Assembly (NCBI GenBank): GCA_002269645.1
Contig: NIVC01000782.1
Location: 1 to 64,000 of the forward strand
DNA: 64,000 nucleotides
Direction: 5' to 3'
DNA from: Macrostomum lignano
Lineage: Eukaryota
The translations under genes were made by a program, and so were the position numbers. The notes under the pieces were generated by a model. That model was not told the origin of the DNA. It worked only from the letters and a program-made list of their open reading frames with translations, and searched no databases. Positions 11,800 through 43,542 of this stretch are shown here, one piece after another. The number at the start of each line of letters is the position of its first letter. Position 1 is the first letter of the stretch.

Positions 11800-11906
11800 T
11801 TCATCCACACCTACCCAGCCTCACAGCTTCATCAAGACCCACTCAGCCTCACAGCTTCATCCAGACCCACTCAGCCTCACAGCTTCATCCAGAACCACTC
11901 AGCCTC
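11800..11906 (-). repeat. 28-bp stop-codon minisatellite of gene B (~4 units including the coding unit)
   Basis: Reverse complement of GAGGCTGAGTGGGTCTGGATGAAGCTGT repeated. Confidence 0.9.
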
Positions 11907-12637
11907 GCTGGCCACCTCGGCGGGCACACCGACGAATCTCAGCAGGCGGCACATGCGGCTCGAAGTCTCAAAGGCGCAGCCCTGACAGTCCAGGCTGGTT
12001 TGGCAGTTGATGGCGCACTCGGTAGGGCTTCTGGCAGCAGCACTGCGGTGAGTTGTTGAATTCGGAAAGCTTGAGATGCTGGGAATCGCTGCGACCTGCA
12101 GCTGCGTCATGGTGTCCTTGACTGTTAGTGGGTAATCGTAGAGGAATAAATATTCATTTCAATAACTTTGAGTCACAAATTAGCCTTTAAATGATAGGAC
12201 ATCAAGACTTCGGTTTACATACCGTGAGAGTAGAATATTTCATAGACAGAGTTTTTGCCCATTCCTCCGCACTTCTGAGAAGAGTTTCCTGTGCAAGACG
12301 TTGAGCAATCGCTCTCCGCCGCTCTACCAAGTCTGCCGTAGGCGGAGCCGCAGCAGCAGTAGTTGCTCCGCTGGGCACCGAAGAATTGAAATCGACCGAT
12401 GGCGCAGATTTGAGCGCACATTTCTAGCGTCATCTCTGCGTTAACTACGAAGGCCAAGTTCAGGACATCGATTTTGTAAGTTCCAAAGCTGGCGATACCT
12501 TGCAGTTCGCTCATGTCTCGGTTGCTGTTATCTCCGTCCGCATAGCAACCAAGGTAGCGAACTCCCAGCAGTTGGGGCGTCAGCATCGCCGAAACGCAGC
12601 CGGTAAAAGCAGTCAAAATCAGCACTGTTGGCGACAT
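11877..12637 (-). CDS. WSC-PAN secreted protein, paralog B (219 aa)
   Basis: Exon1 12637-12223 (signal peptide + WSC: RYLGCYADG...MTLEMCAQIC...YCCCG...CSTSCTGN...CGG...NSVY), GTATGT donor, CAG acceptor, phase 1. Exon2 12121-11877 (245 nt; ECAINCQTSLDCQGCAFETSSRMCRLL...EAEWFWMKL*). Confidence 0.9.
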
Positions 12638-13186
12638 GGTCTAAGCGTACAGAAATAAGATGGTACAACGCCTCCTTTTCAGAGCTTCCTAACGAAAACT
12701 CCCTCAGGACGCAGTGTATTAAATATTTCCACAGACTCAAGTGCTGCCCCATCAACCATCAGGCTTTTGAGTTTGTTGACAATATTTCAACCGTTTTTCT
12801 GCTTTCTAATCACACCATTGTCCGTCAAATAGCTCATACTGAAGATTCTGCGTGAGTATGCAGAACAACTTCAGGGTTCTCAAGGATCTCTTTCTCAATG
12901 GCGATCCGTTTGACTGACGAGTTCAATGACTGAGAATTAGTGGTAAGTGACGCACCACTCGGTTATCCTCGATACGGTTGTGTTTTGCTACAATAAACAT
13001 ACAACTTACTGGCTGTAGTGGCGTATCGACACAGGTGCGAGGAGCCCATGAAAAAATGTTTGCTCCTCCAAAAACTAACTTAATGAAAGAGGTAACCAGT
13101 AGCTCGATAAATGACAGGAGCTCAGTTTTCCTCCTCTTTTGAGATCTGGCATCCAATGGCCTGAAAGACAGGGTGAAACAAGAGAC

Positions 13187-13273
13187 AAGAGACAGCGGCG
13201 CCCCACCAAGAGACAGCGGCGCCCCACCAAGAGACAGCGGCGCCCCACCAAGAGACAGCGGCGCCCCACCAAG
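13187..13273. repeat. 21-bp tandem repeat x4 (CAAGAGACAGCGGCGCCCCAC)
   Basis: Direct. Confidence 0.9.
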
Positions 13274-14607
13274 CGACAACTTGCTCAGGTAGTCGCTCAA
13301 GAAACTGTATACTAAGCCATCTACCGTACTGATCCTGGGCATCACCTTTGACCAGCAGGTCCTGGGCGTCACTTTCAACCTGGAGATATTTACTACCTTG
13401 AAAACCATACTTTGATTCTACTTAAACTACTATGAACCGGCAAGACCAGCTGAAAGTCCTGCAGAGATCTCAGAATCTCACATTTCTCCCGGAAGGGCAT
13501 GTACGAGCCTATTTAGGTGTTGTGAATTCATTATCAATCAGCTGATGCTTGTGATGAGGCTAAACATTTCGGACCGAATTTCTAAGAATCTACCAAATGA
13601 ACTGCTTCTAACAGATCGAAACCGTTTTTTGTGAGGCTGACTCAGTGAGTGTCAGAAAACTCAAGTGAAAACGTCGTTTTTACTAAAATTACTAATAGAA
13701 GGTTATTGCATTGGAAATTATTTATATCATTGTACTCGTGCACAATTCTGAACCAACTTGTTATACACTGCAATGCTATTAATACATTATAGGATAAAAC
13801 CGGCATGACTATACATGAATCTGTAACTTTTGCACAAAGGAAAGTTGATGAGAGACAGGGAAGTTACAGTTAATGTAGATGAAAAAACGTGCAAAAAAGT
13901 ATACGATCGTGGCGTCACAGCGCAGACTCCGAGCTCCCTGCGGCGCAGGTTTGGCCAATTTTTTTGCGCTCACCTGTCTTATCCAAATCATTAACTGTAT
14001 CTCGAGGTTTTTCCTGGCTTGCCGTTCCATTCGCAGCAACTCCTCCGCTCCATCAGCAACACTGATTGACCCCACCATTGACAAATATTTGTCACTTTTA
14101 TACTTTGTTTGTTTGTTTGTTTGGGTTCGTCTAAAAGGTTACTGCAGTTATCGAGACAGGCATGGTAGTAGGTACGAGCGTCAAAGTCAGAAAATGTTTG
14201 TTTTAAAATAGTTCTGGTAAACAGTGCTATCAATTAAATCCATCAATCGTTCACAAACTTTATAAGCACACAGTTACTTCACTTAATGGGAGGCTGTCAA
14301 TCCTGGGCTAAACTCTGAGCTATTATTCTGCTATGAGTAAAAAATCTAAATGCTTTACGAGGTAGCTGCCGGCCGTGCCTGCCGATGGAGGGTTGTGGGA
14401 GTTGGCAGGCTCCCAGGTGGCAATGCTAGCACTCTTGCCATTGTTCGCCATTGCTTAAAAAATCACATTAAGACGTAAAACTGAAGCTATCAGCTCTATA
14501 CATATGAAGTTATCTCTGCCGAAGCCTATGTTTTGTCAGCTAGCTTTGAAACCAAGCTATGCCTCAATACACAGAGAAATGTTTTGTACAACCCGCTACA
14601 ATTAGTC

Positions 14608-15010
14608 ACCGGGAATTAAGCATTGGAGAACAATTAACCACCGGGAATTAAGCATTGGAGAACAATTCATCACTGGGAATTAAGCATTGGAGAACAATTA
14701 ATCACTGGGAATTAAGCATTGGAGAAAAATAAATCACTGGGAATTAAGCATTTGAGAACAATTAACCACCGGGAATTAAGCATTGGAGAACAATTCATCA
14801 CTGGGAATTAAGCATTGGAGAACAATTAATCACTGGGAATTAAGCATTGGAGAAAAATAAATCACTGGGAATTAAGCATTGGAGAACAATTAATCACTGG
14901 GAATTAAGCATTGGAGAAAAATAAATCACTGGGAATTAAGCATTGGAGAACAATTAATCACCGGGAATTAAGCATTGGAGAAAAATAAATCACTGGGAGT
15001 TAAACATTGG
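14608..15010. repeat. 32-33-bp minisatellite x~12 (CACTGGGAATTAAGCATTGGAGAACAATTAAT)
   Basis: Direct. Confidence 0.95.
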
Positions 15011-15119
15011 ATTTACATTTATTATTAGTGAACCGAATTCCGTGCAATCTTCAGACATTGACAACCAGGTAGCACCCCTCCGAGCTGGCAGCAGACAAAC
15101 CACCTAACACCCCAACCTG

Positions 15120-15133
15120 CACACACACACACA

Positions 15134-15170
<37 letters not shown>
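15120..15170. repeat. (CA)n microsatellite
   Basis: Direct. Confidence 0.95.
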
Positions 15171-16238: not shown

Positions 16239-17355
16239 ATGACTTACCGGAGAAGATGCACTTTTGAAGTCGTGCTTTCTGTCTGCTTGACAGCTGCAAT
16301 GGCTGCGGAAGTCGTCAGTTCGGGTGTGCAGTTCTCCGCTGCCAGGACGAGCAGTGCTGTCGCTCCGTCGGAGCTTCTGGTGCAGCCCGAAGACAGCGAA
16401 ATCGGCTGCGGCATTGTGTGCAGCCGCAGGTCCGACTGTTTCGGCTTCTACTGGCTGCTCGGCGCGTGCCGGCTGTTCGACTTGAAGGCGTTTTTCAATG
16501 CCAGCGCCTGGGTCAGCATCGGCACGTGTGACGTCTTCGTGCGAGGTGAGTCACCTGATCGCAGTTGCATATTGCGCATCCGCAGTGGCGTTTGCAGAAG
16601 GGAGGCCGTGACCTGAAAAAATCGCGCTCTCCAGAAACTTATTAAAAAAGGACAACAAGCTATACGAATGACATGCATAAGAGCGCAACTTTTGTCCCAT
16701 CTTTGACATGCCTGACACCTGCCGTGGAGATAAGACCCGTCAAGAGACAGCTGGAAGCTCACCAAGAAACAGGGGTGCCCACTAAGAGACAGTGTCCAAC
16801 AGAACACCAAATGCTGGCGCCCCTTGGGGTTGCGCCCCTCCAATTAAAATTCCTGGTTTCGTCAGTGCGCATCTTCGTTGCGTCTGATTAAATGTATTAT
16901 CGCGTGAGCGCAACGACAACAAATAACTGCTTGCATGTACCTAAATTACAGATTTTACACCTAAGAAACTGCCGATTGCCAGCTGCAGCGAAAGCTCATC
17001 GATGGTGTCGTGCAGCCGCGCCATCGACGGCAACACGAATCGATTTTATGATCAAAACTCCTGCACTCACACTCACAACGGCCTCAGTGAGTGGTGGGAA
17101 GGCAGTCTCACGGCTCCATCTCTCGTGTCATTCGTCACCATCTACAACAGGCAGGACTGCTGCGCTAACGCACTAAACAAGTTCGACATTCTTGTGGACG
17201 GGTCTGTGTGCAACCAGGTGAGGCGCAGCACTCCGTTCTCTGTTTCCGACTTTATCTGCAACGCCCACGGCTCGAAAATCCGCATCTTGAGTCGCAGCGA
17301 TCCGGCAGAGCCCGTAACCATCTGCGAGTTCATGGCCTATGGCATCCAAGGTTAG
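16239..17355 (+). CDS. Secreted PAN/Apple + F-type lectin (fucolectin/FTP domain) protein (236 aa)
   Basis: Exon1 16239-16545 (hydrophobic leader VVLSVCLTAAMAA; PAN GCGIVCSRRSDCFGFYWLLGACRLF), GTGAGT donor, TTACAG acceptor, phase 1. Exon2 16952-17355 with RAIDGN...SCTHT...WW...VTIYNRQDCC...TICEFMAYG, typical of the FTP fold. Confidence 0.9.
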
Positions 17356-18289
17356 CAAGAGATTTGAGCACTGTGGTGTCCGATTTTTTGGGATCGCAGT
17401 ACAATACGTGTATATTCAACTGGGGGGGGGGGTGATAGGTTACAGCAGTAGTTTTTGCTTGGCTCGAAAGCTTACATGTTTTATATTGCTAATTTGTGCA
17501 TTGCTAAATAAAGCAGGTAACTGAAAAGGGACACCTGTCTTTTTACCTTACAGAATTTTAGAAAAAACAAACCGCGCCTACAACTTCAAATCTGCTTAGC
17601 CAGCCAGCGAAACCAATTTTGAATCTTCGGAGTTGTGTTCAACCATTTCAACAAAATGCGATCGACTGCAGAAACGCGAACTTCAACTGAAAAAATAATA
17701 ATTAAATTAAATTAAAGATACTGGAACAAGAAAAATTACTATATATTTCTTTAATAAATTTTACCTTATTTGAACTTAACATCTAAATTTTTATGCGAAT
17801 TTGTGTGCACCCGCAAGCTACATGTATATGTATCCCCTTGGTTTCATTTCGGCCCTTGCTGTTTATGTTCACTTTCCGACCAGCAAACAATTTTCTGTTG
17901 TTTTTTCTCTTGCCAATACTATTTTTTCTGCTGACCAAAAAAGTCTCTATTTTTTAGTCATGCAAAACTTGGAAGTCTAAAATTTTACCTACAAACTAAA
18001 AGACCAATCGCTAATATATCTTTTCTAGCAAAGTTACATACGAGTAATTACGAGGTAGTATTTTTCTTTTAATTTGTCCGCCTCTTGGCCATAAATTGTT
18101 TGAGTATTGTTCTTCAGATTCAAATCTTATCTTTTCAGCATGCGCGTTTCGCACCGAAGGACGCCAAAATGGCTAGTCTATATACTATTCTTGCACTCAG
18201 ACAAGTATCAGTATGCATAAACAAGTGTATACGCTCGTACGGAGGGATATTTTTTCAAAAATGAGCAAAGCCATTTTAAGCCAATCATT

Positions 18290-19949: not shown

Positions 19950-20308
19950 CCTCTCCTCTCTTCTCTCCTCTCTCCTCTCTCCTCTCTCCTCTCTCCTCTC
20001 TCCTCTCTCCTCTCTCCTCTCTCCTCTCTCCTCTCTCCTCTCTCCTCTCTCCTCTCTCCTCTCTCCTCTCTCCTCTCTCCTCTCTCTTCTCTCCTCTCTC
20101 CTCTCTCTCCTCTCCTCTCTCTTCTCTCCTCTCTCCTCTCTCCTCTCTCCTCTCTCTTCTCTCCTCTCTCTTCTCTCCTCTCTCCTCTCTCTCCTCTCCT
20201 CTCTCCCTTCTCCTCTCTCCCCTCACCTCTTTCTTCTCTCCTCTCTCCGCATTCCTCTCTCTCCTCTCCTGTCTCTCTTCTCCTCTCTCCCCTCTCCTCT
20301 CTTCCCTA
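19950..20308. repeat. Polypyrimidine repeat (CTCTCCT)n
   Basis: Direct; explains the spurious SPLSSLL / ERGERRE ORFs. Confidence 0.95.
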
Positions 20309-23203: not shown

Positions 23204-24098
23204 TCACGGCTTCATCCAGACGTACTCGAACTCGCTGGCCAATTCCTCGGGCACAGCGTGGAACTTCAGCAGGCGGCACATGCGGCCTGATGGCGAGAAG
23301 GCGCTGCCCAGGCAGCTCGGGCTGCTGTGGCAGGCGGCGCTGCACTCGAATTCAACTCTGGCTGGGAAACTGCTGTGAGTGATGGAGCTCTGAGCGCTGC
23401 TCATGTTGGGCATCGATGCAGCTGCCAGCTTCTTCGAAATGTTTTCATCTGGTTGGCATAAATGGTGATTTGATGTTTTGCTAGCAATCCAATTGCTGTT
23501 CTTTTGCATAAAATATTGAGCCCCTGGTGCTAAAGCCCCTGGTGCTGGCCTGCATTCAACGCTTCAGCTTACAAGCTTATTCCTTTCAACATACACACCC
23601 GAACGGAACCCATCATGTGCACGACGCCAAAGTTACCCATACTGATAAACATTTCATTCGCTTACACTTCGGGTAGGTGATTTCATAGATTGAATTTCTA
23701 TTGGCACCACCGCACACCTGCGATGCATTCCCGCCGCATTGAAGGTTGCACTGGGAGTCAGGAGCGGCTCCGAGAGAGCCGTAGGCCGACCCGCAGCAGC
23801 AGTACTCGGCAAACTGAACTCCGAAGTAGCGGAATCGGCCGTAATTGCAGATGTCGGCGCACAGTTGCAGCGTCATCTCGCCCGGCTTCTGCACAAAGGC
23901 GGGCACAGTCGGTTTCGTGGCGTACGGACCGAACTTGACAATGCCTTGAAGTCCTCGCAAGTCTCGGTTGCTGTCATCGCCGTCCGCATAGCAGCCGATG
24001 TACTGAAAACCCAGCAGACTCGGCGTTGCGGAGGCCATGCAGCACCAGAGACAAGTGTGCAACAGAAAACAACCAGCGAAGAGGGTTTCTAACGGCAT
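23204..24098 (-). CDS. WSC-PAN secreted protein, paralog C (225 aa)
   Basis: Exon1 24098-23666 (MPLETLFAGCFLLHTCLWCCMASA leader + WSC QYIGCYADG...MTLQLCADIC...YCCCG...CGG...NSIY), GTAAGC donor, phase 1. Exon2 23448-23204 (245 nt; ECSAACHSSPSCLGSAFSPSGRMCRLL...EYVWMKP*). Confidence 0.9.
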
Positions 24099-24284
24099 AT
24101 CCTTACCGCTCACTTTTATTGTGGCCGCTGCTTTGCAACTTTGATGCAGACTTCGCGTTGATATCATTGATATTGTCATCATTATATCTATACCTGCTGC
24201 TGCTCTGTCATTGGATACAGCTCCTATGCACACTGGATGCTTGTCATTGGATAGCAAATGCATTTGCAACGCAATTCCCAGCTT

Positions 24285-27573: not shown

Positions 27574-28464
27574 ATGTTTTCAAAAAGCTTTTCTGTCGGT
27601 TACTTGCTGATGTGGGCAGCGTTCGGAAGCTGCTTGACTTCTGTGCCGCCTCATCCGACGGCATTCCGCTACATCGGTTGCTACGTGGATAAAAGGGACC
27701 CCGACATGACCGGCCTCGTTGGGGTCGCTAAATTCGGTCCGTATTCGATCTTGTCAGGATGGCCATCAATTGCGCAAGGCGCTTCAATGACGCTGCAGCT
27801 GTGCAGCCAGATCTGCGCTTATGGGAGATTTCGGTACTTCGGTGCGAGGTTCGGTGGATACTGCTGCTGTGGCAACAGCTACGGCTCGTTCGGTCCAGCC
27901 CCGGCTACTGACTGCTCGCGTCAATGCAAGGGAAACTCATCTCAAATCTGCGGTGGAAACATGAGGAACTCCGTCTACGAAAATATTTATATTGATGGTG
28001 AGAGGGACTTTTTCTAAAAGGAATGTTGCTTCTTTCATGGAGGACACAATACGTTAAAACCTCAAAAACTGTCACACGAAGAAGAACAACAGTGATGACG
28101 TGACTAGTGCTAAGGATATTCTTTTTTTAAACTTTAGGGCAAATGCTTAGATTTTGCAAAAGTGATGGATAGAAATTTATCTTGAATAAATCATACACCA
28201 TATCTATGAAAAACTGTAGCTGGCCAAGCAATGACCAAGCTGCCAGCTACTGCCATGCCGAGCATCTCAGCTTCACTGAGCTCCATCACCCACAGCAGCG
28301 TCTCTGCCAAGAGCGCCATCCAGTGCGCTGCCGCCTGCCAGCGAAGCCCGGACTGTCAGGGCTGCGCCTTCGTGCCTTCGAGCCGCATGTGCCGCCTGCT
28401 GAGATTCGCTGCTGTGCCCGCTGAGGTGGCCAGCGAGGCTGAGTGGGTCTGGATGAAGCCGTGA
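27574..28464 (+). CDS. WSC-PAN secreted protein, paralog D (222 aa)
   Basis: Exon1 27574-27997 (424 nt), GTGAG donor, TAG acceptor, phase 1. Exon2 28220-28464 (245 nt; QCAAACQRSPDCQGCAFVPSSRMCRLL...EAEWVWMKP*). Confidence 0.92.
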
Positions 28465-28603
28465 GGCTGAGTGGGTCTGGATGAAGCCGTGAGACTGAGA
28501 GGATCTGGATGTAGCTGTGAGACTGAGAGGGTCTGGATGTAGCTGTGGAGGCTGAGTGGGTCTGGATGAAGCTGTGAGGTTAAGTGGGTTTGGATAAAAC
28601 TAT
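28435..28603 (+). repeat. 28-bp stop-codon minisatellite of gene D (6 units)
   Basis: First unit is coding (EAEWVWMKP); the last unit ends GGATAAAACTAT. Confidence 0.92.
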
Positions 28604-29269: not shown

Positions 29270-31250
29270 CACGGTTGCCAAGAGTGCACCTGGTTTGTTC
29301 ACAACACTGCGCTTTCTGCTCCGATGCCTTCCTTGTCGCCATCTGTAGTTCTGTGCACTTGACTGACCTGTGTTGCAGGCAGGGTTGCTCGAATCTCTGA
29401 GCAACTGGTGTCTTGTGTCTGGTGTCTGGAGAAACAGCCGTGACCTGAGATGGTCATGGTGGCAGCCCGGATGTCTCTTCGCGAGAGGCGCAAGAGGAGC
29501 TTCCGGAGCTGGTGAGAGGGCTGAGGAACGGCGCCTCTGGATTGCCTGCAGGTAGTGCAGCTCGCCCAAGTCGAGCGGTGCTGGGTCCTGATCCACGTTT
29601 TGATGCGCGAGTCGATGACACAGCCGGGAATCGGGACAAGGGATTCGGGCCCGAGAGAGGAGCCGGAGGCACCAACTTTTGCAAGGGCGTCAGCCAGCTT
29701 ATTCCCTAGGATGCCCAACTGCCCCGGAACCCACTTAAGGGTGATTTTGTTGGTGGAGCCCAACATGTTTAGAAGTTTGATACAGTCGAGGACTGTAGCA
29801 GAATTGGTACTACAGCCACTGATGGCATGCAAGGCAGCTTGGCTGTCCGAATGGAAAACGATGCTCTTACCCGTTACGCCAGTGGCGGGAAGCTCTGCAG
29901 TGCAAGAGCTGATGGCGAGAACTTCACTTTGGAAAACACTGGAGTTGACCCCAGTGAACTGAACGTGGGTCACGATGACACCCCGTTCAGGCAGATTTAA
30001 ACACCAAAACCGGTGTTGACTGACTGCTTAGAACCGTCGGTGTAGCACTGGAGCTCACAAGGGTTCCAGTGGTACTTGGTGGTATCGTGCGGGTCGATAG
30101 CTCCGGAGTAGAGTTGTCTCAGGTTGAGCGTTAAGGGTCATGCCTTCGGTGAAGACGCGATAGGACTGGTACTCATTGAGAATATTGAGGCATAGGCCGC
30201 TATGCGAGGCGAGGTTCCGCTTAGCAGGTGCTCTCATGTAAAGAAATTTGACTCCGGCATCTAGTCGACGCCGCGTCGTTCAAGCCGCCTTACCCCTGAC
30301 GAAGAGGTCGAGAGGCGGTAGATCGAGGAAGGCCCCCATGCCGGCAAAGGGCGTGGACCTAGTGGCGTTGCAGATAAGCCTACACGCTCTGCCCTGTATC
30401 GTTTTGAGCAAATCTGCATGGCTTTTGACCTGGGTGGCGCTGACCCAGCCAACAGAAGCGTACGTAATGGCAGGTCTAACTACTGAAGTGTAGATCCACC
30501 AAATGCGCTTTGGGGATAGACCCCAGGAAGTTCCAAGTGCTCGTCGGAGCTGGGCCAGGATGGCTGAGGTCCGCTTGGCTTTTGATTTCACGTGGAAGGA
30601 CCAGTTGAGCCGGTAGTCTAGTATGACCCCGAAACATCTGGTCTGTTTCTCGAAAGCTACCGTAAAGCTGCAGAGGCCTCACTGTATGTTCCAGCGTATT
30701 CTACTGGTGAACATAATGGCAACAGTTTTGGGCTCAGAGAGTTCTAAACCATTGTCATTGGTCCAGGATTCTGCTTTGCGGATAAAGCTCTGCATCAGAT
30801 CCCTCAGCGTGCTGGGGGATGGCCATACCACAATGGCCGTGACGTCGTCAGTTTACCCGACTTTGAAGACGGGGTCAGGTCGGGAGTCGCCCAGAAGAGC
30901 GTCAATGACCAAGTTCCAGAGCGTCGGGGTAAGGACTTCGCCTTGGGATCCTCCCTCCCGCCTTGGGATCTGGCGGAGGTAGTTTGCTCTAGGATTTGGG
31001 CAATGACTGTACAGTTGAAGATCATGTACATGATCCATCGTATGAGGGTAACATGAGATTTGAAACTTTGAAGGGTCCTCAAAAAACGCTTAAAAATGAC
31101 GTACCAACAATGTCAAGAAAAAGAGCCAGGGCGTAACCGTCACCCAGTACCGAACGCTCAATTTTCTCGACTATCGCATGCAGGGCGCTGTCAGTCGACC
31201 TCACGGTAAGAAAAGCATGCTGATTACAGAATAATGCTAAGGATTTCATG
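29270..31250 (-). mobile_element. Degenerate non-LTR retrotransposon (LOA/R1-like, RT + RNase H)
   Basis: QHAFLTVRSTDSAL...LFLDI, SQGEVLTPTLWNLVID, FGVILDYRLNW, WGLSPKRIWWIYTSVVRP (RT); SVFQSEVLAI...FHSDSQAAL...WVPGQLGILGNKLADALAK (RNase H). In-frame stops and frameshifts. Confidence 0.9.
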
Positions 31251-32249: not shown

Positions 32250-33219
32250 ATGTTTTGGAAAGGCTTTTCTGTCGGCTACTTGCTGATGTGGGTGGCGTTC
32301 GGAAGCTGCTTGACTTCGGTGCCGCCTCATCCGACGGCATTCCGCTACATCGGCTGCTTCGTGGACAAAAAGGACCCCGACATGACAGGCCTTGTTGGAG
32401 TCGCTACAGTCGGTCCGTATTGGACACATTCCGGATGGCCATCAATTGCGCGTGGTGCTTCAATGACACTGCAGCTGTGCAGCCAGATCTGCGCTTATGG
32501 GAGATTTCGATACTTCGGTGCGAGGTACGGTGGAAACTGCTGCTGTGGCAACAGCTACGGCTCGTTCGGTCCAGCCCCGGAGAGTGACTGCTCGTATAAA
32601 TGCAAGGGAAACTCATCTCAAATCTGCGGTGGAGACATGAGGAACTCCGTCTACGAAAATATTTATAATCACGGTGAGAGGGACTTTTTCCGAAGCGAAT
32701 GTTGTTTTGTTTGTCATTGAGAGCACTGGACGTCAAAATATTGTTATAACGTTAAAAACGGTCGCACGAATCAGAATAGCACTGATTAGTTTGTGCTGAA
32801 AATATTCTTTTTGAAACTCTATTGAGAATGCAAAGATTTTGAAAAAGTCATGTATAGCAATTCGCATTGAATAAATCATATAGAGATGTCTATAAAAACA
32901 CACTATCGAATGGGTCTGACCTTCCTGTTTTAGTTGTGTTTTTAATTTAATTCTGTTTTAATTGAACTTTGTAGCTGGCCTAACAGTGGCCAGGCTCCCA
33001 ACTTCTGCCATGCCGAGCATCACAGCTTCACTGAGCTCCATCACCCACAGCAGCGTCTCTGCCGACAGCGCCATTGAGTGCGCTGCCGCCTGCCAGCGAA
33101 GCCCGGACTGTCAGGGCTGCGCCTTCGTGCCTTCGAACCGCATGTGCCGCCTGCTGAGATTCACCGCTGTGCCCGCTGAGGTGTCCAGCGAGGCTGAGTG
33201 GGTCTGGATGAAGCTGTGA
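32250..33219 (+). CDS. WSC-PAN secreted protein, paralog E (222 aa)
   Basis: Exon1 32250-32673 (424 nt), GTGAG donor; exon2 32975-33219 (245 nt), phase 1; followed by only ~1 extra degenerate 28-bp unit. Confidence 0.92.
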
Positions 33220-34239: not shown

Positions 34240-35737
34240 ATGCTGATATTAAAAATACTAGCAATTGATCTCCTGCTGTTCTGGGCAGCCCTTGCTAGGC
34301 TGTGCACCGCTTCCGTACCACCCAACCGCAGGGCATTCGCTACGTGGGTTGCTTTAGGAGGACGTTAGAGGCTCGTATCATTGGAACACTTGCTGCTATC
34401 GGTAGTTTTGTTGAAAGCAATTCGCTCACTGTAAAATTTTGTGCAGTCACATCTGCACCTACGGGCGGTTCCGAAACTTTGGACTTCTATTCGGTTCGTT
34501 ATGCTTGTAGAGAACTGTTAGTTATATCGTAATCAACTACTTAAAGTAATATTCTAAGAAAATCCTATTAAACTTGCAATCTATTTTTAGAATGAGTCAT
34601 GTTCAAACAGAAGTGACTCAGTGCCCTACGTAGGACCAACGTTTTTTTGATCCAAGGACCGGATTTTAGCAGCTGTGTTTGCTCAACTCAATATGTGGTA
34701 ATGCTCAGACATTCATGACTGCTTATTCAAACATGAATGACCTAAGTAAATATCTGATCTCAAACCGGTTTTTCCCGAAAATTATGCTATAAATATAAGT
34801 GAAAATCCGAGTAAAAAATCAGACTCGGAGCGGTCTCAAAGAAGACTTTGAAGACAAAGAAAAGAAGACCAATCTCTGAGGGACGATACTTGTCCAATTG
34901 GTAAGCGCTTACCAAATTTAGTTCTTTGTTGCTAGCGTTAATAAGTTTATTAATTGCTTACGAGAGCCTTTTTGCCGGCCCATTTGAGAAAGACCTCCTT
35001 GTTTCTTAGGATATATATTCCCAGAGGATGTATTTTATTAATTTGAGTTATCCGTCACGTTTCGGACGTAACGGAGAAGACGCCCTTCATGAGGACCTAC
35101 TACAGAAACTCAGAGAATTCAATTTTTAATTTCGAGCTCGAGGACCGTCAGGACTTCTGATTCGCTCTTGTTTTTGCCCGATCAACAGATAAAGTGAAGG
35201 ACTCCAGGAGACAACAGTTCACAGAAGCCAATTATCACTACTACAGTTCAGCAAGTGTCCCCCAGTGTCTATAGAAGTGGGAGTTTTCGAGTGACTGATC
35301 GCCACTCTTGAAACTCTTCATGCTCCTGCGGCCGGACTAGCGGATCCAACTGGAAGGAATTGGAGAGCAACTGTCAATCCGAATGCAGCGGCAATGTGTC
35401 TCAGATGTGCGGCCTTGAACTGGGCGACTCTGTTTATGAAGTAATTTACCCTGTGGGTAAGTAGGGGGGGGGGGCGTCTATTTGACTGCTCAGTAAGAAA
35501 AGCATATCTTTGACAATAATTGGTCTTAAAAATTGATCGAATGTCCTATCCTAACGCGTGTATCACACTCAGATCGCTCTCTGCTGACATGGCTTCAAAG
35601 GGGCAAAAAATGCCGAGCATTTCAAGCTTTATGAAACTGAGATCCGTAACTGACCTTAGCGCAGAAGTCAGCGAAGTCATCGAGTGAGCTGCCACCTGCC
35701 AGAGAAGCCCGGACTGTCTGGGCTGCACCTTGAGTCT
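34240..35737 (+). pseudogene. WSC-PAN paralog F (pseudogene)
   Basis: MLILKILAIDLLLFWAALARLC...RYVGCF; frameshift near 34440; 815-bp insertion inside the WSC exon; exon resumes CSCGRTSG...CQSECSGNVSQMCG...SVYEVIYPV|GTAAGT. In the PAN exon the first Cys codon is TGA (~35685) and the 3' end is deleted into the repeat array. Confidence 0.88.
34506..35320. mobile_element. Probable solo LTR (815 bp) inserted in the WSC exon of F
   Basis: Begins TGTAGAG and ends CTCTTCA (TG...CA, imperfect inverted ends), flanked by TGCT on both sides (34502-34505, 35321-35324). Removing it restores F-G-S-L-C-S-C-G. Confidence 0.8.
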
Positions 35738-36272
35738 GTGAGGTTCAGTGGGTCTGGATGAAGCTGTGAGGCTGAGTGGATCTGGATGAAGCTGTGAGGC
35801 TGAGCGGATCTGGATGAAGCTGTGAGGCTGAATGGGTCTGGATGAAGCTGTGAGGCTGAGCGGATTTGGATGAAGCTGTGAGGCCGAATGGGTCTGGATG
35901 AAGCTGTGAGACTGAGCGGATCTGGATGAAGCTGTGAGGCTGAATGGGTCTGGATGAAGCTGTGAGACTGAGCGGATCTGGATGAAACTGTGAAGCTGAG
36001 TTGGTCTGAATGAAGCTGTGAAGCTGAGTGTGTCTGGATGTAGCTGTGAGGCTGAGTGGGTCTGGATGCAGCTGTGAGGCTGAGCGGATCTGGATGAAAC
36101 TGTGAAGCTGAGTGGGTCTGAATGAAGCTGTGAAGCTGAGTGTGTCTGGATGCAGCTGTGAGGCTGAGTGGGTCTGGATGAAGCTGTGGAGGCTGAGTGG
36201 GTCTGGATGAAGCTGTGAGGCTGAGTGGGTCCGGATGAAGCTGTGAAGCAGAGTCGGTCTGGATGAAACTGC
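35738..36272 (+). repeat. 28-bp minisatellite after F (~19 units)
   Basis: Direct. Confidence 0.95.
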
Positions 36273-36734
36273 CAGGCTGATTCATCTCTAATGAAAAACT
36301 GTTAGAAGGATTCTGAGCAAGAATTATAGCGGAATTATTAAAAATAGACGTGACTCAGGCTTTGACTATTATTTATGCCTTATTGTTTTTAACGCTATCA
36401 AGAATAACTACTGAAAATGCAATGTCCAGGGAAAACGTTGTGGTTCTACTAAAAATACTAATAAAGGATTGTTACATTCAAAATTAAATTTACTAGCTCA
36501 ATTTAAACTTTTGGATTTAATCTAGTTGTTAAAACATTCTGAACCTGACATGATATACGCAACTAAGTTCAGTTTTTAACACTAAACTCGCGCATCTCAA
36601 ATTCTGGACTGCCGAATACAATATGAAACGAAACTATTCAAGTGAATAGATTGAAAAATGTATTATTACAGAGCGACAGCGCTCAGAACACAGTTGTATT
36701 TCCGAAACAGATCGAAATGAAACGCAAAGCTTAA

Positions 36735-37237: not shown

Positions 37238-38184
37238 ATGTTTTCAAAAAGCTTTTCTGTAGGCTACTTGCTGATGTGGGCAGCGTTCGGAAGCTGCTTG
37301 ACTTCCGTGCCGCCTCATCCGACGGCATTCCGCTACATCGGTTGCCACGTGGATAAAAGGGACCCCGACATGACCGGTCTCGTTGGAGTCGCTACATTCG
37401 GTCCGTATTCGACATATCCCGGATGGCCATCTCTTTTGCGAAACGCTTCAATGACGCTGCAGCTGTGCAGCCAGATCTGCGCTTATGGGAGATTTCGATA
37501 CTTCGGTGCGAGGCTCAGTGAATACTGCTGCTGTGGCAACAGCTACGGCTCGTTCGGTCCAGCCCCGGCTAGTGACTGCTCGTATAAATGCAAGGGAAAC
37601 TCGTCTCAAATCTGCGGTGGAAACATGAGGAACTCCGTCTACGAAAATATTTATAATCACGGTGAGAGGGACTTTTTCTCATGCAAATTTTGTTTTGCCT
37701 GTCAGGACGGCAACGTCGTTAAAACATCAAAAACCGTAACACAAAGCAGGATTTTTTATGATTTCATACTGAAAATATTCTTTTTAAAACCAAACTGCAA
37801 ATTCCAACTGGAAAAGTCAGGGCAATCAGTGTTCGTTGAATAAATCCCAGATATTTCCATACATTCGTAAACAGATTTATTATTTCTATAAGTTTTTGAG
37901 TAAAAATTTCTAAATTCTGTTTTAATACAACATTTGTAGCTGGCCAAGCAGTGACCAAGCTGCCAGCTTCTGCCATGCCGAGCATCTCAGCTTCACTGAG
38001 CTCCATCACCCACAGCAGCGTCTCTGCCAAGAGCGGCATCCAGTGCGCTGCCGCCTGCCAGCGAAGCCCGGACTGTCAGGCCTGCGCCTTCGTGCCTTCG
38101 AGCCGCATGTGCCGCCTGCTGAGATTCACCGCTGTGCCCGCTGAGGTGGCCAGCGAGGCTGAGTGGGTCTGGATGAAGCTGTGA
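37238..38184 (+). CDS. WSC-PAN secreted protein, paralog G (222 aa)
   Basis: Exon1 37238-37661 (424 nt); exon2 37940-38184 (245 nt); phase-1 GT-AG intron. Confidence 0.92.
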
Positions 38185-38628
38185 GGCTGAGTAGGTCTGG
38201 ATGAAGCTGTGAGGCTGAGTAGGTCTGGATGAAGCTGTGAGACTGAGTGGGTCTGGATGAAGCTGTGAGGCTGAATGGGTCTGGATGAAGCTGTGAGGTT
38301 AAGCGGGTCTGGATGAAGCTGTGAGGTTAAGCGGGTCTGGATGAGGCTGTGAGAATGAGAGGGTCTGGATGAAGCTGTGAGGCTGAGTGGGTCTGGATGA
38401 GGCTGTGAGAATGAGAGGGTCTGGATGAAGCTGTGAGGCTGAGTGGGTCTGGATGAGGCTTTGATAATGAGAGGGTCTGGATGAAACTGTGAGACTGAGT
38501 GGGTATGAATGGGGCTGTGAGACTGAGCGGGTCTGGATGAGGCTGTGAGAATGAGAGGGTCTGGATGAAACTGTGAGACTGAGTGGGTATGGATGGAGCT
38601 GTGAGGCTGAGCGGGTCTGGGTAAACTA
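38155..38628 (+). repeat. 28-bp stop-codon minisatellite of gene G (~17 units)
   Basis: Direct; first unit is coding. Confidence 0.95.
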
Positions 38629-39635: not shown

Positions 39636-40842
39636 ATGCAAAGATAAAAATACTACCAATTAATCTCCTGCTGTTCTGTGCAGCTCTTGGTAGGCTGTGC
39701 ACCACTTCCGTACCACCGCAATCGCAACGCATTCGCTACGTCGGTTGCTATGCGGAAAGTTACAAAGATCTGAGAGGAATTTTGGGCTCTGGTCTCTTGC
39801 TGCGGTGTCGCGCAGGGAGCTCCAGTGGTGCCGGTGTCCGCAGCGCAGCCCCCCTCCGGAGAGTCCAGGAGGTGGTTTGTCGTCCACCCGGTAGCCCTTG
39901 GGTAGCGGACGAGCTGGCAGAGATTCTCGAGCCAGAAAACATCGGAGAGATCCGGGTTTGGGCCGAGGTAGGCGAGCCTAGTAAAGGCGGGGCATTCACA
40001 GATAAAGTGCTCCGCATTCTCGACACCGGAGAGGCAGAAGGGGCATTCCTCACTGCGGATTTTTCCATGGAGGTGACGATGCCTGGCAAAACAGCCATGA
40101 CCCAAAATGGCCATGTTCACCGCCCTGATGTCCCTGCAGTAGAGTCCAAGCAGGGCCCAGCGCAAGGCGGGGGAAGGACAGGGGACAACCGCACGGGATT
40201 GCCGGTAGTCGGGGGCGTTAGCCCAGGGCTTTGGTCTCGCTGGGCCATTTAAATGCTGTCGGCGGTTTTTTGAAAGTAATTCGCTCACTGTGGAGCTGTG
40301 CCGCCCGAGCTGCTCATATGGGCGGTTCCGCTACTTTGGTTGTCAATTCGATTCGTTTTGCTACTGCGGCAGGATGTACGGATCAAATGGAAAGGATTTT
40401 GAGAGCAACTGCCAATCCAAATGCAGCGGCAATGTATCTCAGATATGCGGTGGGGAAGTGAGCAACTCTATTTATGCATGAAGTAACTTATCATGTGGGT
40501 AAGTCCGAGTTTGAATGCTGGGTAAAAACGTAAATTTGACAGTAATTAATCTTAGCAATTGACAATATTCCTATCCTAACACATGTACCACCACACTCAG
40601 ATCGCTCTCTGCTGACAAGACTGCAAGTTGTAAAAATGCCAACCGTTTCAAGCTACAAGAAGCTGAAATCCGTCACCGCCCTTAGCACAGAAGTCAGCAG
40701 TGTCTTCCAGTGCGCCTCCTTCTGCCAGCGAAGCCCGGACTGTCAAGGCTGCGCCTTTGTGCCTTCGAGCCGCATGTGCCGCCTGCTGAGATTCACCGCT
40801 GAGGTGGCTAGCGAGACTGAGCGGGTCTGGATGATGTTGTGA
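39636..40842 (+). pseudogene. WSC-PAN paralog H (pseudogene, sister of F)
   Basis: Damaged start (ATG CAA AGA TAA), leader [12 protein letters not shown]...RYVGCYAE, ~450-bp LINE insertion, WSC resumes ([10 protein letters not shown]...CYCG...CSGNVSQICGG), 4-nt insertion before the GTAAGT donor. PAN exon 40601-40842 is open. Confidence 0.88.
39805..40250 (-). mobile_element. 5'-truncated LINE 3' end (same family as 29270-31250) inserted in H
   Basis: RQSRAVVP...[19 protein letters not shown] aligns with RQSRGAVP...RDIRAATMTISGHGCFSRH; C-terminal CPFC-x8-H-x4-C knuckle. Boundaries approximate. Confidence 0.85.
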
Positions 40843-41036
40843 GGCTGAGTGGGTCTGGATGAAGCTGTGAGGCTGAGTGGGTCTGGATGAAGCTGTGAGG
40901 CTGAGTGGGTCTGGATGAAGCTGTGAGGCTGAGTGGGTCTGGATGAAGCTGTGAGGCTGAGTGGGTCTGGATGAAGCTGTGAGGCTGAGTGGGTCTGGAT
41001 GAAGCTGTGAGGCTGAGTGGGTCTGGATAAAACTAT
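40813..41036 (+). repeat. 28-bp stop-codon minisatellite of H (8 units, six perfect)
   Basis: Direct. Confidence 0.95.
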
Positions 41037-41249
41037 CACTGCACTGTGAGGCTGCGTAAGTCCTGATGAAGCCGCGATTTCGATCTATCTAATGATAAAC
41101 AGTGACAAGAGTTCTGAGTAATACCTAATCATGGCGGACTTGGCCAAATCTGAATCTCGTGTGTTTTATGTGGTTTATCTTTTATTATTTATAAAGCTTG
41201 TTGGTATAACAACTGCAAATGCAATTTTTTGATAGGATCTTTCTTCAGA

Positions 41250-41365
41250 TCTGGTAGATGGTGATTATCGATCTGGTAGGTGATGATTATCGATCTGACA
41301 GATGTTGAATATCAATCTGAGAGATGATGAATATCGATCTGGTAGATGGTGATTATCGATCTGGT
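41250..41365. repeat. ~22-bp degenerate tandem repeat (GATCTGGTAGATGGTGATTATC) x5
   Basis: Direct. Confidence 0.8.
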
Positions 41366-41825
41366 GGGTGGTCGGACAGGATTCCGGCCCGCAAAATCAT
41401 GGCACAATAGTGAATACAGCTGCTGCATTTCATGGAAAATAGCTTGATAAACTTGTGGTTGCGACTTGAACAGGACACATCTTTACTTCATTTGCAACTA
41501 GTAAGTCTTGAAGCTGAGGTATTGGAATTGAAGACTAAACAACTGAATATTTCCAACCGAAAAAAGATATCTTTAGATTCAACAATTCAACTTTACAGAT
41601 GCCAGGTGCTAAAAGGCAATAATAAGCTGTCTACTTCACCACAGCTGGTAGTTCCCGCATATTCAACTTCTTTCGCTCTCACGAACAAAAATCCTACATT
41701 TTCCCTGTCTAGAATTGAAGCATCGAAAATTCTCTTTTGAAAAGCTGCCATGATAATTGTCTGGCTGTCAGTATAAAGACTTTGACGGCTGATTGCTATG
41801 AAGAAATGGAAACACACCTGGAGCA

Positions 41826-43542
41826 ATGCAAGCGCCTATAATTTTAGTTGCCTTCCTGTCTGCATGGGTGCCGTTGCTGGCTTCTGAGCCGCCCCAGTTT
41901 CGAGAAGTTCGCTACATCGGATGCTTCGCTGACAGCAGAAGTAACAGCGATCGAGACCTGCAAGGACTGGAAGGCGTCATTGCGTTAGACCGGTACACAG
42001 TTGACCGCAAGTACAGCGCCTTCGTCAAGAGCAGGAAAATGACACTGCAGAAGTGCAACCGGATCTGCTCATACGGTCGGTTCCGCTATTTTGGTGTCCA
42101 AGCAGCTTTTTTTTGCTGCTGCGGATCTGCGTACGGGTCGCTTGGCGCGGTCGATGAGAGAAAATGCGCCGCTCCGTGCAGTGGGAACGCGTCGCAGGTG
42201 TGCGGTGCCAGCTGGACCAATTCCATCTTTGAAATCGTCTATAAGCCTAGTAGGTAATCGCTTATTGCATGCATTGCAAGGTGGCTAAACTCACAAAACA
42301 TGTCAGTTTCACTGAAGCTTGAATGTTGAGCTTCCTAATTTTATCTGAAACAAGTATGGGTATGAAACAAGAAATGCTACCGGAGGCCTGAAATAAAGCA
42401 AATTATACTGATACTGCTTTTGTCCGACTAAAAATCTCATAGAATGAAGATATAGATGGGGCCATAGACAGCACTGAGAAGCCTGACTGAGAGACAGGCA
42501 AACCTGGAAGGCCGCTTAAAAAATTGAAGCCTATTCCTAGTTGAATTTCTAGTTTAGCTGTGAATATTCAGGGTTAAACTAAGAATGAGTGAAATTAAAG
42601 ATCGAGCCCTAGTTAAACTGACCGTTTGAATTAAAAGCACTTAAACAAAGCTGTACTTCAATTGTTATTCCTACTACTTCTAGGGCTTTTCATAACTAAA
42701 ATAATTAATCATCTTACTAAATTTTATTAAACTACTAACCGCAGTAGTAAAATTCAGGTATAGGTCCTAAATTTTGGATGTTCGAGTTTGGATGTCCACT
42801 TAAAGGTTTGCCTGCCTCTCAGTCTTGGGCTGTCTATGGCCCAACCTATCTTTATTCTGTGGGGTTCTAACTTTGGATTTGACCCTCTTCCCGTGAAGAA
42901 ACCCTTTTCACGGTGCAAGTTGGTGTTGGTGTTCCTTTTTGTTGATTGTCGATTTTTTGAAAAACAACTTTTTATAAAATGGTTAGGAATTTACACTTCA
43001 CTGTGCCTGGGGGATAGGCCTTCAAGGCCGCTAATTACACGAGCAGAGCCAAGCCGAGATTCCAATTTAGCACCAAATTAATTTGACCGCACTTGGAATC
43101 GAGCCTGGGCCGCTGGCACATCAGAGCGCCGCTAGTAGAGTACTAGTCTAAGGACCCCTGAAATCGACAGGATCTGGGATATCCATTGATTTCTTTATGC
43201 CTTAATGGGAAGTTCATCATTTGAAAACTACAAAACCTACGTTTGGTTGGCTGATTAATTCCTATAATTATGAGTACGTCTTGCAATTCTCCCACAGCTG
43301 AAAAAATCCTGACCAAGCTACCAGTGACCGACATGCCAAGCATCTCAGTCTTGGCGAGCGCTTCTGCCTATCGCAACTCTACGGCGAAGAGCGCCATCCA
43401 ATGCGCCGCCACCTGCCATCGAAGCCCGGACTGTCAGGGCTGCGCCTTCGTGCCTTCGAGCCGCATGTGCCGCCTGCTGAGATTCGCCGCTGTGCCCGCT
43501 GACGTGGCCAGCGAGGCTGAGTGGGTCTGGATGAAGCTGTGA
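41826..43542 (+). CDS. WSC-PAN secreted protein, paralog I (222 aa)
   Basis: Exon1 41826-42249 (424 nt; MQAPIILVAFLSAWVPLLAS + WSC), GTAGGT donor, 1048-nt phase-1 intron, CCCACAG acceptor. Exon2 43298-43542 (245 nt), followed by ~2-3 more 28-bp units. Confidence 0.9.

What the first reader, a model, noticed from the sequence alone, without database searches (positions are those of the whole stretch)
11877..43542. Variable-exon / constant-exon design: divergent WSC exons joined to a homogenised PAN exon
Seen: all six intact genes have one phase-1 intron and a 245-nt exon 2, and D, E, G and I have a 424-nt exon 1. D and I are only ~45% identical in WSC protein (manual alignment), yet the last 156 nt of exon 2 differ at just 7 sites. 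H has an F-type 5' half of exon 2 but a D/G-type 3' half, and the same terminal repeat unit (AAACTAT) as D and G. Inference: gene conversion or exon swapping keeps the PAN end constant while WSC diversifies, analogous to V/C regions. Because all introns are phase 1 and D-I share a strand, any exon 1 could also be spliced to any downstream exon 2 (protocadherin/UGT1A-like).
Basis: partly seen in the sequence, partly recalled or inferred. Interest (0 to 1): 0.85.

Follow-up and report, generated by a model that had tools for sequence, protein, structure and literature searches.

The report
Flatworm gene cluster with homogenised tails
A cluster of small secreted WSC-PAN genes in the flatworm Macrostomum lignano has front parts that are diverged to saturation, while the last ~150 coding bases and a 28-base repeat array starting inside the coding sequence stay nearly identical, most likely through gene conversion; this is a clean but not unprecedented case of partial concerted evolution, not a shared-exon splicing system.

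Summary
Six intact two-exon genes (B, C on the minus strand; D, E, G, I on the plus strand) each have one phase-1 GT-AG intron and a 245-nt exon 2. D and I share 41% of residues in the WSC exon, yet differ at exactly 7 of the last 156 nt.

Silent sites show this is not plain purifying selection. For D-I, pS is 0.77 in exon 1, 0.60 in 5' exon 2 and 0.09 in 3' exon 2. Breakpoint and run tests are significant. The D/E/G exon 2 is a 3-7% island between an intron and a 3' flank that are about 30% diverged.

The unit is not the exon. Breakpoints lie inside exon 2, or at its start for D/E/G, and all tracts end at the 3' end.

Its first unit is the last nine codons and runs into the stop codon. It follows most copies, including pseudogenes and a dispersed paralogue, and has the same consensus in every array.

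Best reading: ectopic gene conversion anchored at this array, on top of constraint on the PAN core. Protocadherin-like cross-splicing is unsupported and unnecessary. The window is M. lignano itself, so no between-species test was possible. Interest is moderate.

The parts
11877..12637 (-). Gene B: exon 1 12637..12223 (415 nt), intron 101 nt, exon 2 12121..11877 (245 nt). Intact 219-aa secreted WSC-PAN protein.
11800..11906 (-). 28-bp minisatellite of B (3.8 units). The first unit is the last 28 nt of the CDS.
23204..24098 (-). Gene C: exon 1 24098 (or 24038)..23666, intron 217 nt, exon 2 23448..23204. Its array has collapsed to one unit plus a degenerate remnant. It is the copy least homogenised at the 3' end.
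27574..28464 (+). Gene D: exon 1 27574..27997, exon 2 28220..28464. The constant block is 28309..28464.
28435..28595 (+). 28-bp minisatellite of D (5.7 units), with a terminal ...AAAACTAT unit.
32250..33219 (+). Gene E: exon 1 32250..32673, exon 2 32975..33219. Only the coding unit plus one degenerate unit of the repeat remain.
34250..35735 (+). Pseudogene F (second subtype). Exon-1 remnants are at 34250-34505 and 35321-35449, with frameshifts and stops. Exon 2 is truncated and runs straight into the array.
35736..36280 (+). 28-bp minisatellite of F (19.4 units).
37238..38184 (+). Gene G: exon 1 37238..37661, exon 2 37940..38184.
38155..38620 (+). 28-bp minisatellite of G (16.6 units), with a terminal ...AAAACTAT unit.
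39645..40842 (+). Pseudogene H (F subtype). Exon 1 is split by retroelement debris at about 39750-40253. Exon 2 is about 40600-40842: the 5' part is F-like, and the 3' part from 40703 is D/E/G/I-like (90%) with a 9-nt deletion.
40813..41041 (+). 28-bp minisatellite of H: six perfect consensus units plus a terminal ...AAAACTAT unit.
41826..43542 (+). Gene I: exon 1 41826..42249, 1048-nt intron, exon 2 43298..43542. The converted block is 43387..43542.
43513..43574 (+). 28-bp minisatellite of I (2.2 units).
45496..45621 (+). Orphan 28-bp array (4.5 units) with no exon 2. Its 3' flank is homologous to I's 3' flank.
7930..8151 (+). Isolated WSC exon-1 fragment (43% aa identity to D residues 66-139).
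48234..48464 (-). Isolated D-like exon-1 5' fragment (69% aa identity to D residues 1-71).

Best explanation
The region is a birth-and-death tandem array of small secreted WSC + PAN/apple genes of Macrostomum lignano. Part of it was built by duplicating a roughly 5-kb two-gene unit.

The 3' end of every copy is a shared block. It consists of the last ~115-245 nt of the coding sequence and a G-rich 28-bp minisatellite. The first unit of the minisatellite encodes the last nine residues (EAEWVWMKL) and runs into the stop codon.

This block is repeatedly homogenised between paralogues by ectopic gene conversion. The tracts are nested. They share a 3' end at the array and reach different distances 5': all of exon 2 among D/E/G, 156 nt for I, and perhaps about 115-130 nt for B and the dispersed paralogue M5. 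The indel-ridden intron probably acts as a heterology barrier.

Protein-level constraint on the PAN core adds to the similarity. The WSC exon and the first PAN strands are not converted and diverge.

Shown: the near-identity at silent sites, the bounded islands, the incongruent distances, and the arrays with their identical consensus. Inferred: that the array initiates or anchors the conversions, and that the proteins are lectin-like secreted (possibly seminal-fluid) factors.
For: 1. Silent-site contrast. For D-I, pS is 0.765 (exon 1), 0.60 (5' exon 2) and 0.088 (3' exon 2). Fisher P = 3e-12.

2. Breakpoints. Maximum chi-square places them 150-153 nt from the CDS end for D/E/G versus I and 117 nt for B versus the others, all with P <= 0.001. 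A GENECONV-like run test is significant for D-I, E-I and G-I only.

3. Incongruence. Exon 1 gives a star tree in which I is farthest from D/E/G (JC 0.69-0.71). In 3' exon 2, D/E/G/I form a 90%-bootstrap group at JC 0.05-0.08. Proportionality is rejected.

4. Islands among D/E/G. Divergence is 18-21% upstream, 27-36% in the intron and 28-33% in the 3' flank, but 3-7% in exon 2. pS falls from 0.20-0.25 (codons 1-72) to 0.03-0.04 (exon 2), and pN/pS is about 1.3 in the constant part.

5. I's block is bounded on both sides. Similarity to D/E/G starts inside exon 2 and stops at the end of the array. I's 3' flank instead matches the orphan array's flank.

6. The minisatellite. It follows B, D, F, G, H and I, forms the orphan array, and follows the dispersed paralogue on NIVC01000038.1 (17.8 units). 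The consensus is 28/28 identical in all eight arrays. Pseudogene H has six perfect units although its own coding unit carries 4 changes and its 3' exon 2 is 10% diverged. C has lost the array and is the least homogenised copy (39-45 differences in 156 nt). A distant subfamily without the EAEWVWMKL end has no array.

7. GC3 is 0.82-0.86 in the block against 0.60-0.70 in exon 1, as expected under GC-biased conversion.

8. The same pattern recurs in other M. lignano paralogues. P0004 joins a P0001-3-type front to a D/G-type block. P0010 has a very different WSC domain but the same PAN end as P0008/9.
Against: Only I versus D/E/G passes the run test. For B, C and M5 the low 3' divergence could be constraint plus compositional bias, because GC3 of about 0.84 lowers the saturation level of pS.

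An invariant stretch (SRMCRLL) is identical even at silent sites in C, which hints at some nucleotide-level constraint.

The D-G and D-E islands start within 5 nt of the exon 2 acceptor. DNA-level conversion explains this only through a heterology barrier.

The link between array presence and homogenisation rests on very few copies. E has almost no array yet is homogenised.

There are no population, between-species or transcript data. All comparison sequences come from the same species.

My spliced models of I and C were not recognised as exact by the structure tool, so the annotated models may differ.
Confidence: 0.7

Rival explanations
1. No recombination is involved. The PAN core and the adjoining repeat are conserved by selection on the protein plus selection or bias at the nucleotide level (codon bias, or an mRNA 3' regulatory or localisation element).
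For: The 3' block is less diverged in every pair, including C and the dispersed M5. The residues form the structural core of the PAN fold: a helix, a hairpin and the C-terminal strand, with pLDDT around 90. GC3 is very high. The array consensus is identical at dispersed loci. B, C and M5 give no significant conversion fragment.
Against: Divergence is not proportional across pairs. I is the farthest from D/E/G in exon 1 but 3-6 times closer than B, M5 or C in the block. pN/pS is about 1 within the block among D/E/G and I. Pseudogenes H and F keep the block, and H has perfect repeat units. Folding shows no unusual RNA or DNA stability (z = -0.87 and +0.36). C shows that silent sites in the block can diverge (pS 0.33-0.37).
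Confidence: 0.12
2. One or a few unequal crossovers (chimeric-gene formation) produced the pattern, not recurrent gene conversion. In this reading I and H are hybrids whose 3' parts came from a D/G-type neighbour.
For: The genes are tandem and on the same strand, with long arrays that could mispair. Copy number and pseudogene content point to birth-and-death dynamics. H shares the D/G terminal repeat unit.
Against: A single crossover would also transfer the D/G-type 3' flank. I's flank beyond the array is not D/E/G-like and matches the orphan array's flank. The D/E/G islands are bounded on both sides. Different pairs have different 5' boundaries.
Confidence: 0.08
3. This is a protocadherin/UGT1A-like design. 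Any exon 1 can be spliced to any downstream exon 2, so exon 2 behaves as a constant exon.
For: All introns are phase 1 and D to I lie on one strand, so cross-junctions would stay in frame.
Against: Each exon 1 has its own acceptor and exon 2 within 101-1048 nt, followed by its own repeat-bearing 3' region. The dispersed paralogue M5 has a canonical AATAAA about 100 nt after its array, and poly(A)-like hexamers lie downstream of most window copies. There is no single shared constant exon. The similarity boundary lies inside exon 2, which splicing cannot create. Splicing does not homogenise genomic DNA.
Confidence: 0.03
4. Homogenisation is templated by spliced mRNA or cDNA, which would be 3'-polar and limited to exons.
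For: The tracts are 3'-anchored and nested. The D-G and D-E islands begin within 5 nt of the exon 2 acceptor, while the intron is 27-36% diverged. Retroelement fragments lie inside the cluster.
Against: The E-G similarity continues about 30 nt into the intron. The 3' half of exon 1 also has lowered pS, yet the intron is retained, whereas a cDNA tract spanning both exons would delete it. A heterology barrier explains the boundary more simply.
Confidence: 0.04
5. This is an assembly or polishing artefact. Reads from paralogous 3' ends and repeat arrays were cross-mapped, which erased paralogue-specific variants.
For: The block and the arrays are the kind of sequence that is prone to collapse or consensus polishing.
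Against: Independent M. lignano protein sets and the NIVC assembly show the same constant end and the same array. Paralogue-specific differences persist inside the block.
Confidence: 0.03

Closest known systems
Segmental concerted evolution by ectopic gene conversion in tandem gene families. The classic case is the human fetal globin genes HBG1/HBG2, where the converted tract ends at a simple-sequence (TG)n stretch (from my own knowledge).
   Same: Duplicated neighbours. An island of near-identity that includes silent sites, flanked by older divergence. The tract boundary is associated with a simple or tandem repeat.
   Different: Here the tract covers only the 3' part of the CDS. It involves at least four functional genes plus pseudogenes and perhaps dispersed copies. 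The repeat is a 28-bp minisatellite that overlaps the stop codon.
Polar gene conversion next to human G-rich minisatellites such as MS32, MS31A and CEB1 (from my own knowledge).
   Same: A G-rich array with strand asymmetry and 10-100 bp units. Copy number is variable. Exchange is polarised towards one end of the array.
   Different: The human events are allelic and were measured directly in germline DNA. Here the exchange is between paralogues and is inferred only from sequence. The array starts inside an open reading frame.
Clustered protocadherins and UGT1A: variable first exons spliced to shared constant exons
   Same: A tandem series of first exons, each with its own start codon and donor site. 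Phases are compatible.
   Different: The constant exons there are single-copy and shared through splicing. Here every gene carries its own copy, and constancy is a property of the genomic DNA.
Trypanosome VSG cassettes, and other contingency families in which conserved 3' coding or UTR ends serve as recombination homology (from my own knowledge).
   Same: A variable N-terminal binding domain joined to a conserved C-terminal end. The conserved sequence could serve as the homology block for conversion.
   Different: There is no evidence here for programmed or somatic switching, expression sites or silent archives. This looks like ordinary germline evolution.
WSC-domain candidate seminal-fluid transcripts of M. 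lignano. Mlig-pro46 and others are described as WSCD2-like in PMC6953679. Table S1 of PMC5977470 lists many WSC hits and one plasminogen (PAN) hit among the screened transcripts.
   Same: Same species. Small WSC-containing secreted products. Transcript lengths of about 0.7-1.4 kb fit a 669-nt CDS plus a repeat-bearing UTR.
   Different: No sequence link could be made between those transcripts and this cluster. Expression of these genes is unknown.

Membership tests
WSC domain proteins (PF01822) | Profile match above the curated cut-off, and the WSC fold. | tested here: met
   D scores 45.5 bits and I 47.2 bits against a cut-off of 27.8. Foldseek hits Kremen WSC, yeast Wsc1 and the WSC domain of glyoxal oxidase (E 3e-6 to 3e-4).
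PAN/apple domain (PF00024) | Profile match above the curated cut-off, and the apple fold. | tested here: met
   D scores 26.5 bits against a cut-off of 21.4. I scores 20.8, just below it. The model's C-terminal half matches factor XI and kallikrein apple domains, the HGF N domain and plasminogen PAN.
Ectopic gene conversion / partial concerted evolution | Paralogue near-identity that includes synonymous sites, confined to a segment. | tested here: met
   D-I pS is 0.088 against 0.765. D/E/G exon 2 pS is 0.03-0.04 against flanks about 30% diverged.
Ectopic gene conversion / partial concerted evolution | The tract is bounded on both sides by older divergence, i.e. a patch rather than a crossover. 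| tested here: met
   (I's block ends at the array and its flanks are unrelated). (D/E/G intron and 3' flank).
Ectopic gene conversion / partial concerted evolution | Statistically supported breakpoints or fragments, and incongruent segment trees. | tested here: met
   Maximum chi-square P = 0.0005. Run test P = 0.0003-0.0017 for I versus D/E/G only. 90% bootstrap for D/E/G/I in the 3' block against a star tree in exon 1.
Ectopic gene conversion / partial concerted evolution | Paralogues cluster by species rather than by orthology in the converted segment. | not testable with these tools
   All related sequences retrieved are from M. lignano itself. No other Macrostomum genome is in the collections.
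Protocadherin/UGT1A-type variable/constant exon locus | One shared set of constant exons downstream of all the variable exons. | tested here: not met
   Each gene has its own exon 2 and its own 3' region.
Protocadherin/UGT1A-type variable/constant exon locus | Transcripts that join a variable exon to a distal constant exon. | not testable with these tools
   No transcript data were available.
Minisatellite | Head-to-tail array of 10-100 bp units whose copy number varies between loci. | tested here: met
   TRF finds a period of 28 and 2.2-19.4 copies at seven window sites and 17.8 copies in L001. The consensus is identical in all arrays.
Minisatellite-driven (polar) conversion hotspot | Exchange events initiate at or next to the array and decay with distance from it. 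| tested here: inconclusive
   Nested tracts share the array end, and divergence falls towards the array. The evidence is correlative and based on few copies. Initiation cannot be observed from one genome.

The most novel reading that the evidence does not exclude
The 28-bp array is not a bystander. It would be a maintained recombination anchor: a 3'-UTR minisatellite whose first unit is the last nine codons, running into the stop codon, and which has stop codons in all three sense frames. Unequal or ectopic exchange would therefore never damage the reading frame. Such an anchor would keep the PAN core constant across clustered and dispersed members of a fast-diversifying, possibly seminal-fluid, lectin-like family. 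It would also feed C-terminal variants (Ala/Thr, Met/Val, Leu/Pro, all seen as array-unit variants) into the coding unit. A more exotic version is that the 3'-polar, exon-bounded tracts are templated by cDNA.
Probability: 0.15. Interest if true: 0.7.

Novelty: new member of a known kind. Interest (0 to 1): 0.4.

Why it matters
The cluster gives a compact, testable example of how recombination partitions a gene into a diverging part and a homogenised part, in a laboratory flatworm that has transgenesis, RNAi and inbred lines.

If the coding-end minisatellite really anchors the conversions, the cluster would be a natural system for measuring paralogous conversion polarity.

It is also a practical warning. 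Whole-gene trees, orthology calls and dN/dS scans of this family will mislead unless the 3' block is analysed separately. WSC-domain transcripts are listed among candidate seminal-fluid genes in this species, so such scans are likely to be run.

Tried and rejected
1. I first treated the M. lignano hits as another species and read the shared 3' block and array as between-species conservation. I rejected this when a 77-aa M. lignano UniRef protein proved to be encoded exactly by window exons at 17155-17596, including the residues that separate it from its 95%-identical sibling. All comparisons are therefore between paralogues.

2. A species-distance estimate from the 309-aa ORF at 683-1612 failed because no homologue was found.

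3. A scan of metagenome contigs for the repeat unit gave 0 hits.

The exact D, G and I proteins are not in the protein collection.

5. The structured-RNA and hairpin-DNA ideas for the block and array got no support: folding z-scores were -0.87 and +0.36.

6. The idea that the constant block is attached to other N-terminal domains (true exon shuffling) got no support. All 12 hits carrying the EAEWVWMK-type end align with the WSC-PAN family over their whole length, and none shows a foreign N-terminal domain. P0006 and P0007 are truncated or degraded in the WSC part.

7. Positive selection across the whole WSC exon is not supported (pN/pS 0.13-0.19 in codons 1-50). Only local patches are hypervariable.

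8. Literature searches for gene conversion or this family in Macrostomum found nothing specific.

Full report
WHAT IS THERE

The window is eukaryotic. tblastn with the two exon products finds eleven copies or fragments of one gene family between 7.9 and 48.5 kb. Six copies are intact. B and C lie on the minus strand. D, E, G and I lie on the plus strand.

Each intact gene has a GT..AG intron in phase 1 and a 245-nt exon 2. Exon 1 is 424 nt in D, E, G and I, 415 nt in B, and 433 nt (or 373 nt) in C. The products are about 220-aa proteins with a hydrophobic N-terminus.

Pfam finds WSC and PAN_1 domains. An AlphaFold2 model of D has pLDDT 81 and pTM 0.75. It matches Kremen and Wsc1 WSC domains and factor XI, HGF and plasminogen apple/PAN domains. 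The whole of exon 2 folds as the PAN domain.

F (34.25-35.7 kb) and H (39.6-40.8 kb) are pseudogenes of a second subtype. They alternate with E and G, so this part of the array grew by duplicating a roughly 5-kb two-gene unit.

WHICH ORGANISM

All homologues found are Macrostomum lignano proteins at no more than 68% identity, so I first assumed the window came from a related species. That was wrong.

A 77-aa M. lignano UniRef entry is encoded exactly by two exons at 17155-17349 and about 17561-17596. The match includes the four residues that distinguish it from a 95%-identical sibling entry. The window is therefore M. lignano itself or something indistinguishable from it.

It follows that P0001-P0016 and locus L001 are paralogues from the same genome. 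L001 carries gene 'M5', a singleton beside a P450 gene on NIVC01000038.1. No between-species comparison was possible.

D and I share 56/138 = 41% of residues in the exon-1 product. They differ at 35 of the first 89 nt of exon 2 and at exactly 7 of the last 156 nt.

H's 5' exon 2 resembles only F (80/101). Its 3' part is 90% identical to D, E, G and I alike. D, G and H share the degenerate terminal repeat unit ...AAAACTAT.

IS IT SELECTION OR RECOMBINATION?

Nei-Gojobori counts for D-I give pS = 0.765 in exon 1, 0.60 in 5' exon 2 and 0.088 in 3' exon 2. Fisher P = 3e-12.

The maximum chi-square test places the D/E/G-I breakpoint 150-153 nt from the CDS end, with 45% divergence on one side and 5% on the other (P = 0.0005). 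A GENECONV-style run test is significant for D-I, E-I and G-I (P = 0.0003-0.0017) and for no other distant pair.

In exon 1 the family is a star and I is the farthest from D/E/G (JC 0.69-0.71). In the 3' block, D/E/G/I form a 90%-bootstrap group at JC 0.05-0.08. B is at 0.17-0.20, M5 at 0.18-0.21 and C at 0.31-0.34 from D/E/G/I. Proportionality of the two segments is rejected (P = 1e-6 to 0.04).

Among the younger duplicates D/E/G, the neutral yardsticks are 18-21% divergence upstream, 27-36% in the intron and 28-33% in the 3' flank. Exon 2 differs by only 3-7%. pS falls from 0.20-0.25 in codons 1-72 to 0.03-0.04 in exon 2.

Inside the constant part, pN/pS is about 1.3 for D/E/G and 0.4-0.9 against I. 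The few differences there are therefore not being filtered by protein-level selection.

Pseudogenes keep the block.

GC3 is 0.82-0.86 in the block against 0.60-0.70 in exon 1, the direction expected from GC-biased conversion.

Other M. lignano proteins repeat the pattern. P0004 joins a P0001-3-type front to a D/G-type block (THSSVSAKS.IQCAAACQRSPDCQAC). P0010 has a very different WSC domain but the PAN end of P0008/9.

Together these results refute plain purifying selection for I and D/E/G. They support ectopic gene conversion.

Tandem Repeats Finder shows a 28-bp minisatellite, GAGGCTGAGTGGGTCTGGATGAAGCTGT. Its first unit is the last 28 nt of the CDS before the final GA of the stop codon.

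Copy numbers are 3.8 (B), 5.7 (D), 19.4 (F), 16.6 (G), 7.7 (H) and 2.2 (I). An orphan array at 45.5 kb has 4.5 copies. E and C keep only one unit plus a degenerate remnant.

The dispersed paralogue M5 has the same gene structure (427 / 78 / 245 nt) and 17.8 copies of the same unit, followed about 100 nt later by AATAAA. The array therefore most likely lies in the 3' UTR.

All eight arrays have a 28/28 identical consensus.

H has six perfect units, although its own coding unit carries four changes.

The unit has TGA in all three sense frames and no stop codon on the antisense strand. In-register exchange therefore preserves the C-terminus.

Three array-unit variants (A4, G19, C26) correspond to C-terminal residue variants seen in paralogues: Thr, Val and Pro. 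This is suggestive only.

A distant subfamily without the EAEWVWMKL end has no array. C has lost its array and is the least homogenised copy.

MECHANISM PROPOSED

All similarity tracts share the array end and reach different distances 5':
- the whole of exon 2 among D/E/G;
- 156 nt for I;
- about 115-130 nt of reduced divergence for B and M5.

This nested, 3'-anchored pattern is what conversion initiated in or next to the array would give. The array offers up to 0.5 kb of near-perfect paralogous homology. The indel-rich intron would act as a heterology barrier, which would explain why the D-G and D-E islands begin within 5 nt of the exon 2 acceptor.

The initiating role of the array is an inference. 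For B, C and M5 the reduced 3' divergence may owe as much to constraint on the PAN core and to compositional bias as to old conversions. An invariant SRMCRLL stretch is identical at silent sites even in C.

WHAT IT IS NOT

The boundary is inside exon 2, so neither whole-exon swapping nor alternative splicing can generate the pattern.

A protocadherin/UGT1A design requires one shared constant exon. Here every gene has its own exon 2, and the distal-junction transcripts could not be tested.

RNA and DNA folding of the block and array is unremarkable.

An assembly artefact is unlikely, because independent M. lignano data show the same end and the same array.

FUNCTION

Function is inferred only. 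The proteins look like secreted two-domain carbohydrate- or protein-binding factors.

WSC-like transcripts are reported among M. lignano candidate seminal-fluid genes (PMC6953679; Table S1 of PMC5977470). I could not link those transcripts to this cluster.

Among D/E/G, non-synonymous changes concentrate in two WSC patches: codons 51-72 and 91-100.

VERDICT

The finding is real and well measured. The exon-level V/C framing and the cross-splicing idea are not.

This is a new example of a known process, segmental concerted evolution. It has one unusual and testable twist: a minisatellite that overlaps the end of the coding sequence.

Noticed in passing
window 16239-17596 (+): A multi-exon gene with a Cys-rich PAN-like N-terminal exon and an F5/8-type-C (FTP/fucolectin-like) domain. 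Its last two exons encode M. lignano UniRef A0A1I8G7G6 exactly, which identifies the species.
   Followed up: yes
window 9996-10710: A run of about 700 bp of a pure trinucleotide repeat. It is open in several frames (poly-Ser, poly-Val, poly-Leu).
   Followed up: no
window 51630-52667 (+): An intact 345-aa mariner/Tc1-type transposase ORF (Pfam Transposase_1, HTH_48, DDE_3).
   Followed up: partly
window 58364-61371 (-): A 647-aa THAP-domain, P-element-like transposase (THAP, TNP-like RNase H, Tnp_P_element), followed by a 295-aa ORF with no Pfam hit.
   Followed up: partly
window 29156-31082 and 39750-40253: Retroelement debris between D and E (weak RNase H hit) and inside exon 1 of pseudogene H. 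The first fragment may have replaced the F-type partner expected after D.
   Followed up: partly
window 683-1612 (+): A 309-aa ORF with a Cys-rich PAN-like start. It has no Pfam hit and no homologue in the 5.8-billion-protein search.
   Followed up: partly
window 14598-15011, 19951-20302, 24284-24573, 24959-25433, 56.3-57.6 kb: Several unrelated minisatellites: 32 bp x13, 7 bp x50, 22 bp x13, 34 bp x14, and a 30-bp coding-like repeat. The region is unusually rich in tandem repeats.
   Followed up: no
window 7930-8151 (+), 48234-48464 (-), 45496-45621 (+): Extra debris of the family lies outside or at the edge of the reported range. There are two isolated exon-1 fragments and an orphan 28-bp array. 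The orphan array's 3' flank is 69% identical to I's 3' flank over about 600 bp.
   Followed up: partly
D/E/G codons 51-72 and 91-100 (e.g. window 27724-27789 and 27844-27873 in D): Two hypervariable patches in the WSC domain: pN/pS 0.94, and 10 non-synonymous against 0 synonymous differences. The first patch is also the most variable stretch among the M. lignano paralogues P0001-3.
   Followed up: partly
   Followed up: no
L001 10721-11219 (M. lignano NIVC01000038.1): The array of the dispersed paralogue has a 56-bp higher-order alternation of consensus and GAGACTTAG units. G and F show 56/112-bp periodicities of their own. Each array therefore has private internal structure despite the shared consensus.
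   Followed up: partly
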